A stretch of DNA of 64,000 bases, from positions 42,656,001 to 42,720,000 of the forward strand of contig NC_043005.1 of NCBI RefSeq assembly GCF_006345805.1, given 5' to 3'. The position numbers and the translations under genes are program-made. This DNA is from Octopus sinensis. Lineage: Eukaryota. Positions 22,851 to 64,000 of the stretch are shown in pieces (the stretch's first letter is position 1; every line of letters begins with the position of its first letter). Below the pieces are notes generated by a model that was not told the origin of the DNA, did no database searches, and was given only the letters and a program-made list of their open reading frames with translations.

Positions 22851-23258
22851 CAGGCGGCGAGCTGGCAGAAACGTTAGCACGCCGGGCGAAATGCGTAGCC
22901 GTATTTCGTCTGCCGTTAAGTTCTGAGTTCAAATTCTGCTGAGGTCGACTTTGCCTTTCATCCTTTCGGGGTCGATTAAATAAGTACCAGTTACGCACTG
23001 GGGTCGATATAATCGACCTAATCCGTTTGTTTGTCCTTGTTTGTCCCCTGTGTGTTTAGCCCCTTAAGTAGGTATTTCGTCTGTCGTTACGTTCTGAGTT
23101 CAAATTCCGCCGAGGTCGACTCTGCCTTTCGTCCTTTCGGGGTCGATAAATGAAATACCAGTTTCGCACCGGGGTCGATGTAATCGACTTAATCCGTTTG
23201 TCTGTCCTTGATTGTCCCCTCTATGTTTAGCCCCTTATGGGCAATAAAGAAATATATA
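22851..23258 (+). mobile_element. SINE family 3 dimer (full unit + head-less unit)
   Basis: Second unit restarts at GTATTTCGTCTG (about 23070); single TSD AACCCTTATTG at 22840-22850 and 23259-23269. Confidence 0.9.
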
Positions 23259-23819
23259 AACCCTTATTGAGGATATAAAGAAGAAAATATATTGCTCCAT
23301 TTGAGAGTTTTATTTCAAAAACAAATTAGCGACACTCCATTGCATAAATTCTGCAATCTTCATAGAATAAGGGACAGAAAAGGTTATACATGTTTAGTTC
23401 ACGAACAAAAGAAAGCCTATCGAATGTCGAAACAAATTCTTTTGGCGAGGAAATATCTCGGGTGTGGGTGAGTGAACGCAATCTGTCAATCTCTTATGTC
23501 GAGTACGTTGAAAGACATTATAAGAAAATATGTTATGGTAAGAATAAGGTATTAAACTGTTCAGTTTTTTTTTTTAATATTTATAAAAAGTGTATTTATT
23601 ATATTAGTCAATGGAAAATATGTTCCTCTTTTATTCAGCTCGTATATACTAGCCATAAGAATAAATGTGAACACAAACTCAAATACATACGTACGTATGT
23701 GTGTGTGGTATAGCCATATATTTAGATATGTATATATATTATACATACATACATACATACATACATACATACATACATACATACATACATACATACATAC
23801 ATACATACATACATGCATA

Positions 23820-23960
23820 TATATCTCGCCATGCTGAACCGTAGAACTCTACAAATTTTTTTCTTTCTCAGTTTTTTAAAAATTCTTTCTCCGTTTTTTT
23901 TTTCTCTTAATCCTTCCTGTCGAAGCGCGTAGGTTCGAAACGTAAAAGAGTTTTCCAGAT
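23820..23960 (+). mobile_element. PLE pLTR-type module with a degenerate U6-variant HHR motif (23913-23948)
   Basis: CTGTCGAAGCGCGTAGGTTCGAAACGTAAAAG; homologous to about 34985-35100 (-); flanked by (CATA)n and (TA)n. Confidence 0.6.
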
Positions 23961-25015
23961 ATATATATATACAAATATGTGTGTATGTATGTATGTATGT
24001 ATATATATATATAATATATATATATATAATATATATATATATATATATATATATATACATATATATATATATATATATATATATATAGATAGATAGATAG
24101 ATAGATAGATAGATAGATAGATAGATAGATAGATAGATAGACATGCATACATCCATATACAGAGATAAGGACAGAAAGTAAGAGAGAGGTCGAGGGACAC
24201 TATTTGTGATTAAATGTTTGTATGTAGGAATTTAACTCACGAGTTAGAATAGTATCCGGAATAGGTTATGCATGATGAAGACAGCATCACATCTAATTTA
24301 AACAGTAAAATATTTGAAGCAATTTATTCGTATTTGACATATTCGTTATAAGTATTTTTCTCAATAAACATCCTATTGCAATGGCTGCCAAATGTTCTCA
24401 GAACGAAGAACACCAACTAATAATTAACCCTTAAAAGTTCGAAGAAGTCATTTTAATATAGAGAAAAAAATGATCAAATTATCTTCTGTGAATAAGCAAT
24501 GCACGTAAAAGGAACAGCATACATTTAATGGTTGTTTGTAAACTAATGAGACACCTGACTTTAATGTGATTTACTAATTTCATTTAGTCCCAGTGGAATA
24601 TTTGATAAAGCGATATGTAGTTCAATTTCCAACGATAATACGCAGTGCTGCGGCTTCGTTTTGATCTTAAATGAATGATGAGACCGTCGTCTCAAAGAAA
24701 TATATGGTAGAAAAGGGAAGTAATGCTTTTAAGGCCTTTTTATGCAATCTCTGGATATTCCTTTTGTGTCGTTATCCAGAATGTGTGAATAGAATATTCG
24801 GAAAATTGTGAATTTAATGAGTTATCAGTGGGTTGGTTTAGTTCTATAGCAGTGAGATTAGCTATATCGTGTGAATCTATTGGTAATGGTACAACTTACC
24901 GTTGGAAATGACTGAAGAGAATTATGAACATGAGACTGCTGTAGTAAAGATACTCACACATTATTCTTTTGTTTTGTTTTTTATTCTTTTACTTCAGTTA
25001 TCTTTATTTTTTTCT

Positions 25016-25215
25016 TCAGTTATTTAACTGCAGTCATGTCGGAGCATCGCCTTAAAGGGTTTTTAGTCGAAAAATCGACCCCAGGACTTGTTCTTTGTAA
25101 GCCTAGTACTTATTATATCGGTATCTTTAGCCGAACCGCTAGATTACGGGGACGCAAAGATGCCAACATCAGTTGTCAAGTGATGGGGGCGGGGACAAAC
25201 ACAGACACAATGACA
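25016..25215 (-). mobile_element. SINE family 1, tail half
   Basis: Matches the 3' half of the 20394-20800 copy. Confidence 0.8.
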
Positions 25216-25249
25216 TATCACACACACACACATATCAATACGCTCAATT

Positions 25250-60655: not shown

Positions 60656-61154
60656 TATAGCCCGTGAAATCATGGACTAATTCCTATATTTTATAGTAAA
60701 CGATATAATTAACACGTTATTATCATTAACCATTTAATCATTCTTTCTCATTTTGGCACTGGCCAGCAATTTTGAAGTGAGGGGCAGTTCGGTGCAATTG
60801 ATCCCATGATTTGACTGGTTTTATTTTATCGTCTCTGAAAGGATGAAAGGGATAGTTGGTTGCCGCAATATTTTAACTGAAAACGCAATAATGAGACGGA
60901 AAAAATGTCGTACTATATCTTAACTCTATGATATATTGTATAACTTGTACTATATCTTAACTCCTAGAATTTTGTTTTTGATTATTTTTAAGAAAATTAG
61001 CTGCAGTGATTGGAAGAAAAATGCATTTAGAGTAGAGCAGAGAGTTCATTTGATTGTATGCAATAAAGTGAAATAACATTGTTCTTTGACGTATATATAT
61101 ATATATATATATATATATTATATATATATATATATATATATATATATATATATA

Positions 61155-61368
61155 AAGTTAATCCAAACAAGAAAACACAGAAAAAAAACACAGCAACGCG
61201 AGGACGTGGAACAATTAAAGTATTATTTGACGCTCAAGAAAGAAGGGAAGGAGGGTTTAACGTTTCAAGCGGAGCTCTTCGTCGGAAACAAGGAGAAGGA
61301 GAGATCCCGAGAAGGGAAGACAGAGGGGAAAAAATAGTTTTGCTGGTGGTGCTCAAGAGATCACATGT
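61155..61368 (-). mobile_element. PLE pLTR-type module with HHR motif (61255-61289), in (TA)n
   Basis: Homolog of 9303-9497; GUUU-CcGACGA-A-GAGC(UCC)GCUu-GAAA-C-GU-U-AAAC. Confidence 0.72.
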
Positions 61369-62149
61369 TGATATATATATATATATATATATATATATAT
61401 ATATATATATATATATATATATATATATGTATGTATGTATGTATGTATGTATGTATGTATGTATGTATGTATGTATGTATGCATGTATGTATATATATTC
61501 TTTTTGTTCGACATTAGGCTTAGAAACCTTCATTACGACTTTAACTTCGTGAACACTGTATTGTCAGTAAACAGCTTATGTAACTGGAATATCGGCAAAT
61601 GCTGTAATGTTTAAATAAGGACGCATGAATATTATTTAGTGATCTGTGATTTCATTGGCTGAATCTCACCAGCTATGTGCTTCTGCTACAAATAAATCTA
61701 TATCTGTGGAAGTAATAAGTATGTACATATGTATTTATTATTAGTGTTAGCGAACAGAACTTCATTTCTTCATTTTTCTTTGCTATCTATCACATAAGAC
61801 CAGAGGCAATGTGTAAGTTTCATAAATTTTATCTATCGAAATATTATTAATCTTGAACTTGGTAACATAGCTGCGAGTCAAAAAGACTTCAGAAAAGAGT
61901 TACAACATGGTATGACATATCTAACTATATATGTTCTAAAAACATACTGCAGATGCATAGCTTTTTTTTTTCTACTTATAGTATACTAAGTACGCACATA
62001 TTTAAACTGTATACAATTACTTTTCTTAAAGAGGCGGCGGTTTTGGGAAAGATTATGCTTCTTTGAACGAAATCTATCGGGTAGACGGTTTATAAGATAT
62101 TCTGCTTTTTATTATTGTCTTTATGATTATCATTAAGTTCAAGACAACC

Positions 62150-63725
62150 AGCTGGCAGGGTCGTTAGCAGCCCTGGTAAAATGCTTAGCAGCATTTCGTA
62201 TGTCTTTACGTTCTGAGTTCAACTCCCTCCGAAGTCGGCTTTCCTTTTCGTCCATTTCAGGGCCGATAAAGTAATTACCAGTTGAACATTTGGGTCGATG
62301 TAATCGACTTAACCCTTCCTTCCAAAATTGCTGGCTTTGAGCTAAAATTTAAGACCATTATTGCTAGTAAGCTGGTAGAGTCGTTAGCGAAGTTGGATAA
62401 ACTATCTAGAGGCATTCATTCCGATTCATTACATTCTGAGTTCAAATTTTACCAGGGTGAAGTTTCCCTTTTATCTTTTCAGTGTCGATAAAATAAAATA
62501 CCAGTCAAGTTCTAGGATCGATGCAATCGACTTGCTCCCTCCCTTTAAGATTACTGACCTTTTGACCTTTTATCAAAATTATAAAGAATTATTATTACTA
62601 TTCTCATGGTTGTGCTCCAGCATGACCGCAACCTAATGACTGAAACAAATTAAAGAATTATAATTAAGACGTCTGGCAGAATAGCTAGAACGCCCAGCGG
62701 TAATTTTTCCCAATCATATGTTCTGAGTTCAAATTCTACCGCACACGACTTTGCTTTCATCCTATCGAGGTCAATAAAATAAATAAGAGTTGAGCAATAA
62801 AGTCGATGTAATTGACTCACCCATTCCCTCTAAAATTGCTCGCCTTGTTTCAAAATTTGAACCTGTCAAATGCTGCCGCGGTATATTTTGCTTTTCATTC
62901 TTTCGGTGTCGATAAATTAAGTAAGGTTGAGCTCTGGGGCCGATGTAATCGATTAATACCCGTCTCCTAAAATTGCTGGTCTTGTGCCAAAATTAGGAAA
63001 TATTTCAATGCTACGAGCGGTCAGAACTGTCAGCATGTTGGACAAAATGCCTTGTAGCATTTATTCTGGCTTTACGCTCTGAGCCCAATTTCCACCGAGG
63101 TCCAATTTGCGTCTCATCCTTTCAGATCGATAAAATAAAGTACCATTTGGGCGATGGAGTCGATGTTTTCGACGTCCACCTCTCTCAAAATAACAGGTCT
63201 TGTGTTTATAGTAGAAAGAATTATTACTATCATATTTCATCAGGCGAGTTGAGAGAATAATTTGCAAGCTGGTCAAAATGCTAGGTAATATTTCTTCCAG
63301 TTTTATATTGTGCGCAAATTTCACCAAGATCGACTTCACTTTTTATCCTTTCAAGGTCGATAAACTAACTGCCAATGAAATATTGGAGATGAATATAACC
63401 AATAAAACCTTTCTCCTTAAAAGGACTAGCCTTACGCTAAAATTTGAAAGAATTATTATCATTAAATCAGTGAAAGAAGCGGCGAGCTGGCAGAATCGTT
63501 AGCATACTGGGCAAAATGCTTAGTGGTATTTCGTCCCTGCAAGCTCGTGGGGGAGAAAATAAGTCGAATACATTGACTCCAGTCCTCAATTGGCACGTAT
63601 TTTGTCGATCCCGAAAGGATGAAAGGCAAAGTTGACTCGGCTGAATTTGAACTCGGAACGTAAAGATGGACCACATACCGCGAAGTATTTTTCCCGGCGT
63701 GCTAGTGATTCTGCCAACTCGCTAT
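62150..63725. repeat. Cluster of about 8 diverged family 3 SINE copies, mostly head-to-tail on +, one on - at about 63555-63725
   Basis: Recurring TTCTGAGTTCAAAT...TCGATAAAAT...GTCGATGTAATCGAC...AAAATTGCTGG blocks separated by short (ATT)n. Confidence 0.85.
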
Positions 63726-63760
63726 TTCAGATCGTATTTTAATATTAAATGGAAAACTGG

Positions 63761-64000
63761 AGCGGCGAGCTGGCAAAAACGTTAGCACGCCGGGCAAAAT
63801 GCGTAGCCGTATTTCTCTGCCGTTACGTTCTGAGTTCAAATTCCGCCGAGGTCGACCTTGCCTTTCATCCTTTCGGGGTCGATAAATTAAGTACCAGTTA
63901 CGCGCTGGGGTCGATATAATCGACTTAATCCATGTGCCTGTCCTTGTTTGTCCCTTCTGTGTTTAGCCCCTTGTGGATAGTAAAGAAATAGGTATTTCGC
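63761..64000 (+). mobile_element. SINE family 3, young; a second unit begins at the window end
   Basis: Ends ...GTAAAGAAATAG|GTATTTCGC, the same junction as the other multimers. Confidence 0.9.

What the first reader, a model, noticed from the sequence alone, without database searches (positions are those of the whole stretch)
22851..64000. SINE family 3 moves as dimers and trimers with a fixed, self-complementary junction
Seen: the dimers at 22851-23258 and 42605-43012 and the trimer at 51269-51853 are each enclosed by one TSD pair. Every downstream unit (also at 63991) lacks the head and restarts at GTATTT, the 3' arm of the head hairpin CGAAATGC-loop-GTATTTCG. In four of five junctions the upstream unit ends AAAGAAATAG, giving GAAATA-GG-TATTT(C/T), a small inverted repeat. 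Units within an array are diverged, and the last trimer unit has the older-subfamily tail. Monomers with TSDs also exist (13151, 56783). Inference: either multimeric source genes read through by Pol III, or RT template jumping or RNA ligation at a defined site guided by tail-to-arm pairing.
Basis: partly seen in the sequence, partly recalled or inferred. Interest (0 to 1): 0.7.

Follow-up and report, generated by a model that had tools for sequence, protein, structure and literature searches.

The report
SINE arrays with headless repeat units
A short retrotransposon family in this AT-rich animal genome often occurs as one complete copy followed by one or two promoter-less copies joined at exactly the same base, which is a variant of known composite SINEs and probably arose when one copy inserted into the hairpin loop of another.

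Summary
Three complete arrays (22853-23253, 42607-43012, 51272-51853) are each enclosed by one 15-16 nt target-site duplication with no internal duplication. A fourth array is cut by the window end. All five downstream units start at the same base.

The joint is the complete tail (AAAGAAATA) followed by GGTATTT, the last loop base plus the 3' arm of a stable 13-bp head hairpin. The extra G is templated, because most non-array heads read GGTATTT. The junction palindrome is literal but not thermodynamically meaningful.

New findings:
- The partner LINE is in the window and shares the roughly 45-nt tail.
- The break site is the only RTATT in the element and matches where the family's duplications begin.
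- All arrays carry one head variant.
- Downstream units do not form a clade; their nearest relatives are monomers of other subfamilies.
- The last trimer unit has the older tail and is CpG-decayed.

Best reading (about 0.45): the junction is a target-primed insertion scar in a resident copy's loop, and such composites were re-copied whole by Pol III read-through. Growth in place and RT template jumping remain open.

No external copies could be retrieved, so no genome-wide census was possible.

The parts
22853..23071 (+). Dimer 1, unit 1. Full-length element with the H1 head (loop GCGTAGCC) and a B-type body. Its tail carries a roughly 13-nt deletion (…CCCCTTAAGTAG).
23072..23253 (+). Dimer 1, unit 2. 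Headless unit starting at GTATTT, with the G at 23071 belonging to it. Its subfamily is that of monomer 56783 (94.9% identity, bootstrap 86).
22835..22850 (+). 5' target-site duplication of dimer 1 (ATATTAACCCTTATTG). The 3' copy is at 23254-23269 with one mismatch.
42607..42839 (+). Dimer 2, unit 1. Full-length element with the H1 head, ending AAAGAAATAG.
42840..43012 (+). Dimer 2, unit 2. Headless B-type unit with an 11-nt internal deletion, ending AAAGAAATA.
42590..42604 (+). 5' target-site duplication of dimer 2 (AGTATTACCTACTCA). The 3' copy is at 43013-43027 with one mismatch.
51272..51502 (+). Trimer, unit 1. Full-length element with the H1 head.
51503..51686 (+). Trimer, unit 2. Headless unit whose 5' 30 nt carry older-type states (TGTCTTTAC), followed by a B-type middle.
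51687..51853 (+). Trimer, unit 3. Headless unit with the older-subfamily tail (…CTTGTGCCTAGAGTAGAAAAG). Only 3 of 10 body CpG sites are kept.
51253..51268 (+). 5' target-site duplication of the trimer (AATATTCCACTAACTC). The 3' copy is at 51854-51869 with one mismatch.
63760..64000 (+). Fourth array. A full-length unit with the H1 head, junction AAAGAAATAG|GTATTTCGC at 63991|63992, then cut by the window end.
13151..13388 (-). Monomer with the H1 head. TSD ATATAACGAATT at 13139-13150 and 13389-13400.
56783..57015 (+). Monomer whose head loop reads GCTTTGTGGTATTT. TSD ATATTAAATCCCTGG at 56768-56782 and 57016-57030.
54865..55078 (-). Monomer with a B-type body. Its head loop reads CTTAGCGG, and the 3' arm of the hairpin is deleted. 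It lies inverted inside an older SINE, with TSD GGGTAA(G).
7350..7399 (+). 3' end of the partner LINE, homologous to the last roughly 45 nt of the SINE tail and followed by (TATC)n at 7401-7824. The LINE body is about 3584-7399, with endonuclease at 3584-4210 and reverse transcriptase at 5221-6545.
2428..2470 (+). 3' end of a second copy of the same LINE, with the same tail homology, followed by (TATC)n at 2475-2581.

Best explanation
The arrays are composite SINE copies. Each has one complete element with the promoter-bearing head, followed by one or two promoter-less body-plus-tail units.

Origin of the joint (inferred). The joint, complete tail AAAGAAATA followed directly by GGTATTT, has the anatomy of the 3' junction of a target-primed reverse transcription event. 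A family-3 element would have inserted, in the same orientation, into the apical loop of the head hairpin of a resident copy. That is the one place in the element carrying the family's preferred nick motif (N|RR-TAT-T).

Re-copying of the composite (inferred). Transcription starts at the inserted element's own Pol III-type promoter. The element has no T4 terminator, so the transcript runs through the first tail into the resident's body and tail. The partner LINE, present in the window, primes on the last tail. The new copy is head-unit-unit with a single TSD pair and without the resident's head. A second round gives trimers.

Shown:
- the fixed joint
- single TSD pairs
- the templated G
- the LINE-derived tail
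- the target motif match
- the mixed origin and age of the units

Inferred:
- the nested-insertion origin
- Pol III read-through
- movement of the array as a whole

The number of independent origins is unresolved.
For: 1. Five of five downstream units start at the same base.
2. The upstream unit ends at the family's canonical 3' terminus, with no flank sequence and no untemplated bases. The G is the base found before GTATTT in most other heads.
3. The TSDs of six independent family-3 insertions start ATAT, ATAT, AGTAT, AATAT, ATAT and GGGTA. TATW occurs about once per 32 nt of strand in the window. The joint starts GGTAT, and position 49 is the only RTATT in the 231-nt consensus.
4. The consensus has no TTTT, against 1.9 expected.
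5. The tail is homologous to the 3' ends of two LINE copies in the window.
6. All four arrays begin with the H1 head, whose loop (CC before GTATTT) fits the nick motif less well. Every downstream unit starts GG, and the three complete ones with the new tail belong to body types seen in the window with GG-type heads.
7. Trimer unit 3 has the older tail and keeps 3 of 10 CpG sites. Unit 1 keeps 9 of 10, unit 2 keeps 7 of 10 and the head keeps 7 of 8. The pooled figure for the other units is 86 of 99 (p=0.0002). An old genomic copy was therefore joined to young ones.
8. This LINE/SINE system visibly homes to tail-like sequence. Two LINE copies are head-to-tail across (TATC)n, and 6-7 older SINEs pile up in one orientation at 62136-63450.
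Against: - Four of seven family-3 loci in the window are arrays, and each array has a different composition. If composites arise by rare nested insertion, many different masters must be active, or composites must be strongly favoured.
- No intermediate locus (resident head, then a full element, then the resident body) is seen in the window.
- The trimer would have to be mobilised through the older tail after the young H1 elements existed.
- CpG decay in trimer unit 3 is uneven: 0 of 7 sites kept in the first ~70 nt of the unit (alignment columns 62-122), 3 of 4 afterwards. A simple old resident does not predict this.
- Dimer 1 shows no age gradient: unit 2 keeps 10 of 10 CpG sites and unit 1 keeps 7 of 10.
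- The sample is five junctions from one 64-kb window.
Confidence: 0.45

Rival explanations
1. RNA-level assembly. SINE RNAs with the GG-type loop are cut in the apical loop, or RT stops there. RT reaches that 5' end and jumps end-to-end to the 3' end of another SINE RNA, adding units until a full-length H1-type RNA is copied.
For: - The joint is blunt, with no microhomology, and falls in the loop of a very stable hairpin (-17.7 kcal/mol, z -2.8).
- Units are drawn from different subfamilies and downstream units form no clade, as expected for pairing from an RNA pool.
- The high array frequency needs no hot spot.
- Serial end-to-end jumping by non-LTR RTs and double-jump chimeric retrocopies are documented (PMC8594491, PMC2104539).
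Against: - The acceptor RNA must end exactly at AAAUA, but Pol III has no terminator there.
- No untemplated bases occur at any of five joints.
- No solitary headless unit is found in the window (0 of 7 loci).
- Trimer unit 3 is CpG-decayed, so it would have to come from an old promoter-less copy.
- This model leaves the coincidence of the break with the only RTATT motif unexplained.
Confidence: 0.17
2. Growth in place. A new element inserts by target-primed reverse transcription at the loop site of a resident copy. Its cDNA then anneals to the resident's homologous head, so the head is not duplicated and no internal TSD forms. The outer TSD is the resident's.
For: - It shares the target-motif match and the templated G with the best explanation.
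- It fits the trimer most simply. An old element with the older tail arrives first and younger units are added in front.
- Array TSDs each have one mismatch, while monomer TSDs have none.
Against: - It needs a preference for this one site at least 50-fold above the roughly 640 RTATT sites in the window.
- The resident's head should be kept on at least one strand. Yet the trimer head is fresh (7 of 8 CpG; p=0.025 against unit 3), and all array heads are H1 although the downstream units imply GG-type residents.
- Dimer 1 shows no age gradient.
Confidence: 0.15
3. One ancestral dimer. The joint arose once and is inherited. Unit number and unit composition then changed by homologous template switching or unequal recombination among family members.
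For: - The joint is identical, including the G, in five of five cases. The deleted joint in dimer 1 still keeps TAG|GTATTT.
- One head variant sits on all arrays but on only one of three monomers.
- The first units of both dimers are sisters at 96.6% identity.
- Head and body markers are also shuffled among monomers.
Against: - Downstream units do not cluster. The two dimers' second units are 86.4% identical, and one groups with a monomer at bootstrap 86.
- The last trimer unit has a different tail.
- It needs frequent recombination that has not been shown.
Confidence: 0.15
4. Tandem duplication after insertion, or rolling-circle copying of a circular RNA.
For: The units are head-to-tail with a period of 171-184 nt.
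Against: - Units within an array are 83-93% identical and belong to different subfamilies, while units in different arrays reach 95-97%.
- The trimer's last tail differs.
- No ribozyme match was found.
Confidence: 0.02

Closest known systems
Complex (dimeric or trimeric) SINE families copied from composite masters, such as Alu, Twin SINE and tree-shrew or armadillo tRNA dimers and trimers (SINEBase definitions, PMC3531059; PMC4758252). Bov-A2 is cited from my own knowledge.
   Same: Several SINE-derived units lie head-to-tail inside one TSD pair, joined at a conserved joint, with only the first unit needed for transcription.
   Different: - Here the downstream units are the same element minus its first 47-48 nt, not complete monomers of different origin.
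- Unit number varies.
- Units are drawn from different subfamilies and ages rather than forming position-specific lineages.
Head-to-tail SINE multimers made by insertion into the tail of a resident copy, such as Dip, B2 and B1 in rodents (PMC8466645)
   Same: Arrays are abundant, and the system tends to home to its own sequence. The older SINE pile-up at 62136-63450 and the LINE-LINE tandem in this window look like this kind.
   Different: Those units are complete and the target is the tail. In family 3 the target-like site lies inside the head hairpin, so downstream units lack the head and there is no internal TSD.
Chimeric retrocopies made by LINE RT template jumping, such as U6-L1 type chimeras (own knowledge), the tripartite chimera in Magnaporthe (PMC2104539) and serial jumping in vitro (PMC8594491)
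   Same: The upstream partner ends at its exact 3' end, and there is one TSD pair around the chimera.
   Different: In those chimeras the donor break point varies and extra bases are common. Here the break is fixed and clean, and it coincides with an integration motif.
Retrozymes and ribozyme-bearing tandem repeats (reviewed in PMC11722881)
   Same: Short tandem units with a fixed unit boundary, mobilised by retroelement enzymes.
   Different: No hammerhead or other self-cleaving ribozyme match was found, and units in an array are not copies of one another.

Membership tests
SINE (non-autonomous, LINE-mobilised, Pol III-type head) | Variable-length target-site duplications flanking each insertion | tested here: met
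   TSDs of 12-16 nt (0-1 mismatch) flank five of the six complete loci; the sixth, m55078, has only 6-7 nt.
SINE (non-autonomous, LINE-mobilised, Pol III-type head) | 3' region shared with a partner LINE | tested here: met
   The last roughly 45 nt align to the 3' ends of two LINE copies at 2428-2470 and 7350-7399. The LINE has endonuclease and RT domains.
SINE (non-autonomous, LINE-mobilised, Pol III-type head) | Head derived from tRNA, with A and B boxes | tested here: inconclusive
   A B-box-like GAGTTCAAATTCC and an A-box-like TGGCAGAAACG are visible by eye, and an anticodon-arm-like hairpin is present. ARAGORN finds no tRNA and Rfam gives no tRNA match at E<=1.
SINE (non-autonomous, LINE-mobilised, Pol III-type head) | At least about 100 interspersed copies per genome | not testable with these tools
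   Only the window is available. It holds 7 family-3 loci and about 12 older relatives in 64 kb. No copy was found in any public collection searched.
Complex SINE copied from a composite master | One TSD pair around the whole array and none inside | tested here: met
   Three complete arrays.
Complex SINE copied from a composite master | Conserved joint between units | tested here: met
   Five of five joints fall at the same base.
Complex SINE copied from a composite master | Position-specific lineages: first units cluster together and second units cluster together | tested here: not met
   Second units do not cluster. Their nearest neighbours are monomers or first units of other arrays. The sample is small.
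Tail-targeted serial insertion (head-to-tail multimers of complete units) | Each unit complete, with its own TSD or tail-derived duplication | tested here: not met
   Downstream units lack positions 1-47/48, and no internal repeat is present.
Retrozyme or ribozyme-bearing tandem repeat | Self-cleaving ribozyme in each unit | tested here: not met
   No hammerhead, twister, HDV-like or other ribozyme family matched at E<=1 in 42500-64000.
Template-jump chimeric retrocopy | Upstream partner ends at its exact RNA 3' end, and the donor is broken at a 5' end or a variable internal point, often with extra bases | tested here: inconclusive
   The exact tail end is met. The break is fixed, not variable, and there are no extra bases. 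RNA ends cannot be tested here.

The most novel reading that the evidence does not exclude
The element carries its own integration or breakage hot spot in the loop of its anticodon-like hairpin, and multimers are built repeatedly and efficiently. Two routes would do this. One is self-homing insertion resolved by annealing to the resident head, meaning growth in place. The other is joining of loop-cut 3' halves through RT end-to-end jumping. Either would be a defined, recurrent way of making complex SINEs and of shuffling heads and bodies, rather than a one-off accident that was later amplified.
Probability: 0.3. Interest if true: 0.65.

Novelty: new variant of a known kind. Interest (0 to 1): 0.42.

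Why it matters
How complex SINEs and new head/body/tail combinations arise is usually inferred from a single frozen product such as Alu. Here one family shows monomers, dimers and trimers with a base-exact joint. The units have different subfamilies and ages, and the partner LINE sits nearby. The steps of composite formation could therefore be read directly from a genome-wide census and from presence/absence polymorphisms. If the joint forms recurrently at a self-encoded hot spot, that would explain fast module shuffling in SINEs mobilised by LINEs that recognise a specific tail. If it is a single inherited joint, this is an ordinary composite SINE subfamily.

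Tried and rejected
1. Getting more copies from outside the window failed.
- Exact-pattern scans of metagenome, viral and prokaryote genome collections gave only chance matches or nothing.
- A junction-spanning SINE ORF has no relative among 5.8 billion proteins.
- A search with the LINE RT found only short contigs at 84% identity or less, plus unrelated long contigs. 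L028 has no SINE. L029 carries the same LINE 3' UTR but ends before the tail.

2. The literature gave nothing specific. I found no paper describing cephalopod or other SINE arrays with headless units at a fixed loop site, and no paper contains the sequence. That the organism is a cephalopod is only my guess from sequence style and was not established.

3. Rfam and ARAGORN found no tRNA and no ribozyme. The miRNA-model hits are TG/TA repeats and inverted SINE pairs.

4. Rejected explanations:
- Tandem duplication in place and rolling-circle copying, from the identity matrix.
- Serial insertion of 5'-truncated copies downstream of a resident. That would leave an internal TSD and make downstream units younger.
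- GAAAT microhomology between the tail and the 5' arm. It predicts a joint that retains the loop, which is not seen.
- Unequal crossing-over in place for the trimer. The middle of unit 2 is B-type, unlike both neighbours.
- The junction hairpin as a guide.

Full report
**What is there.**
BLAST and a profile search of the window with the family-3 unit find seven family-3 loci. Three are monomers: 13151-13388(-), 54865-55078(-) and 56783-57015. Four are arrays: 22853-23253, 42607-43012, 51272-51853, and one from about 63760 that is cut by the window end. About a dozen older relatives at 73-80% identity are also present.

In every array the first unit is full length, with profile positions 1-231. 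Every later unit starts at profile position 48/49, GTATTT. If 5' truncation were uniform, four further truncations landing on the same base would have a probability of about 3.5e-10.

Each of the three complete arrays is enclosed by one direct repeat of 15-16 nt with one mismatch. No flank-type repeat lies at an internal joint. Four joints read AAAGAAATAG|GTATTT. The fifth (23071|23072) reads CCTTAAGTAG|GTATTT, which is the same joint after a roughly 13-nt deletion in the first unit's tail.

**Anatomy of the joint.**
- The head folds into a 13-bp hairpin with a 4-nt loop. The energy is -17.7 kcal/mol (z -2.8). In the 56783 variant it is -17.3 kcal/mol (z -4.5), with both sides of the top pair changed.
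- An alignment of 17 heads shows that most heads read …TTAGCGG/TTAGTGG/TTTGTGG-TATTT, that is GGTATTT. Only the H1 variant reads GCGTAGCC-GTATTT.
- Terminal units end AAAGAAATA and then run into their TSD. None has the G. The G is therefore templated by the downstream unit.
- The joint is a blunt join of the complete tail to the last loop base plus the 3' arm: AAAGAAATA|GGTATTT.
It would need a 2-nt loop. Folding 41-nt windows gives -1.6 to -6.4 kcal/mol, z from +0.9 to -2.2, and uses other pairs. I do not regard it as a structural feature.

**Partner LINE and target preference.**
The profile also hits 2428-2470 and 7350-7399. These are the 3' ends of two LINE copies with endonuclease and RT domains, each followed by (TATC)n. 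About 45 nt of the SINE tail align to them, so the partner LINE is in the window. The two LINE copies are themselves head-to-tail across the microsatellite.

The six family-3 TSDs start ATATAA, ATATTA, AGTATT, AATATT, ATATTA and GGGTAA. TATW occurs about once per 32 nt of strand in the window, so five of six having it at offset 2-3 is far from chance. The joint starts GGTATT. Position 49 is the only RTATT in the 231-nt consensus on the element's strand. The chance that an unrelated break point would fall there is about 1-2%. The joint therefore looks like an ordinary 3' junction of a target-primed insertion (tail, then target DNA), where the target is the loop of a resident copy.

**Who is joined to whom.**
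- Within arrays the units are 83-93% identical over the shared body. Across arrays the best pairs reach 95-97%.
- The first units of both dimers are sisters at 96.6%.
- Unit 2 of dimer 1 groups with monomer 56783 (94.9%, bootstrap 86). Unit 2 of dimer 2 is B-type, like monomer 55078.
- The two second units are only 86.4% alike.
- Trimer units 2 and 3 are basal in the tree.
- Downstream units do not form a clade.
- All four arrays begin with the H1 head, whereas two of three monomers have GG-type heads.
- Head and body markers are also mixed among monomers.

These results exclude duplication in place and rolling-circle copying. They also argue against one unchanging dimeric master.

**Age of units.**
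| Unit | CpG sites kept |
|---|---|
| Trimer unit 3 (older-subfamily tail) | 3 of 10 |
| Trimer unit 1 | 9 of 10 |
| Trimer unit 2 | 7 of 10 |
| Trimer head | 7 of 8 |
| All other units, pooled | 86 of 99 |

Unit 3 differs from units 1 and 2 combined at p=0.015, and from the pooled set at p=0.0002. An old genomic copy has been coupled to young ones, which is most natural if the coupling happened in DNA. Two cautions apply. The decay in unit 3 is uneven, with 0 of 7 sites kept in the first ~70 nt (alignment columns 62-122) and 3 of 4 after. The dimers show no significant gradient.

**Mechanism.**
The reading I favour (about 0.45) uses only standard steps.
1. A full-length element inserts into the loop of a resident copy.
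2. Its own promoter drives a transcript that meets no T4 run. The consensus has no TTTT, against 1.9 expected.
3. The transcript continues through the resident's body and tail.
4. The LINE enzyme primes on the last tail.

The copy then lacks the resident's head and has one TSD pair. The H1 loop (CC before GTATTT) fits the N|RR-TAT motif less well than GG-type loops. This may be why arrays are capped by H1 heads and every downstream unit starts GG.

Against this reading:
- Four of seven loci are arrays and each has a different composition, which implies many active composite masters or a strong advantage for composites.
- No nested intermediate is present in the window.

Rivals:
- Growth in place with homology-assisted 5' joining (0.15). 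It suits the trimer, but needs a strong hot spot and does not fit the fresh H1 heads.
- Loop-cut RNAs joined by RT end-to-end jumping (0.17). It explains the frequency and the random pairing and has biochemical precedent (PMC8594491, PMC2104539). It needs RNA ending exactly at AAAUA, predicts solitary headless copies that are not seen, and leaves the motif coincidence unexplained.
- A single ancestral joint with later shuffling (0.15).

**Comparison with known systems.**
Composite SINEs and head-to-tail SINE multimers are well known (PMC3531059, PMC4758252, PMC8466645). The differences here are that the repeated module is the same element minus its head, that it is cut at the loop of the head hairpin, and that unit number and composition vary. 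No ribozyme is present, so this is not a retrozyme-type repeat. I found no description of this arrangement. I rate it a new variant of a known kind, of moderate interest.

**Limits.**
No further copy of the element could be retrieved from any collection available. All inferences rest on five joints and eleven units in one 64-kb window. The source organism was not identified.

Noticed in passing
window 16-2581 and about 2590-7824: Two copies of the partner LINE lie head-to-tail. The second starts right after the (TATC)n tail of the first, and both end in a 3' region homologous to the SINE tail, followed by (TATC)n.
   Followed up: partly
window 62136-63450: Six or seven older-subfamily SINEs, plus a fragment of another SINE family at about 62590-62655, are packed in the same orientation. 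Each abuts the AT-rich tail (…AATTATTA) of the previous one. Most keep their heads, and one (62866) is truncated at the B-box. This looks like serial insertion into tails.
   Followed up: partly
window 54693-55130: An older SINE is interrupted at …CTTACCC by the inverted family-3 monomer 54865-55078, with a 6-7 nt TSD. The older element's tail (…CTCTGTGCCTACAGAATGTAG) resumes after 55078 and resembles the tail of trimer unit 3.
   Followed up: yes
window 54865-55078 (-): This monomer has lost 15-17 nt, exactly the 3' arm of the head hairpin (TATTTCGTCTGCCGT), while keeping the 5' arm and the loop.
   Followed up: no
window 63479-63722: A head-only fragment (to GGTATTTCGTCC, just past the break site) abuts the tail of an inverted SINE with a third tail type. 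The resulting inverted pair with the next element produces spurious miRNA-model hits at 63686-63801.
   Followed up: no
window 51687-51853: CpG loss in trimer unit 3 is uneven. All seven sites in the first ~70 nt of the unit are lost. Three of four later body sites survive, and several CpGs in the tail are present. Its first 30 nt share older-type states with unit 2. This suggests a mosaic or local gene conversion.
   Followed up: partly
window 22820-22850 and 23254-23277: The flank of dimer 1 contains a near-perfect 19-nt tandem duplication (AACCCTTATTGAGGATAT), so the TSD can be read as 16 or 19 nt with 15 extra 5' bases.
   Followed up: partly
window 57880-59818: A second, different LINE-like element has a gag-like ORF with a CCHC zinc knuckle, followed by an ORF that resembles (by eye, no Pfam hit) the endonuclease ORF of the partner LINE. 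It could be the partner of the older tail, but this was not tested.
   Followed up: no
window 41566-42036: An ORF gives a weak, below-Pfam-cut-off match to a homeodomain-like HTH domain (HTH_32) and may be a Tc1/mariner-type transposase fragment. It lies next to (GA)n/(ATAG)n repeats, just upstream of dimer 2.
   Followed up: no
window 51506 and 51690: Both downstream units of the trimer begin GTATTTTG, a T4 run that would stop Pol III. If these runs were present in the source, read-through by Pol III would be blocked. They are C-to-T changes at a CpG site and may post-date insertion.
   Followed up: partly
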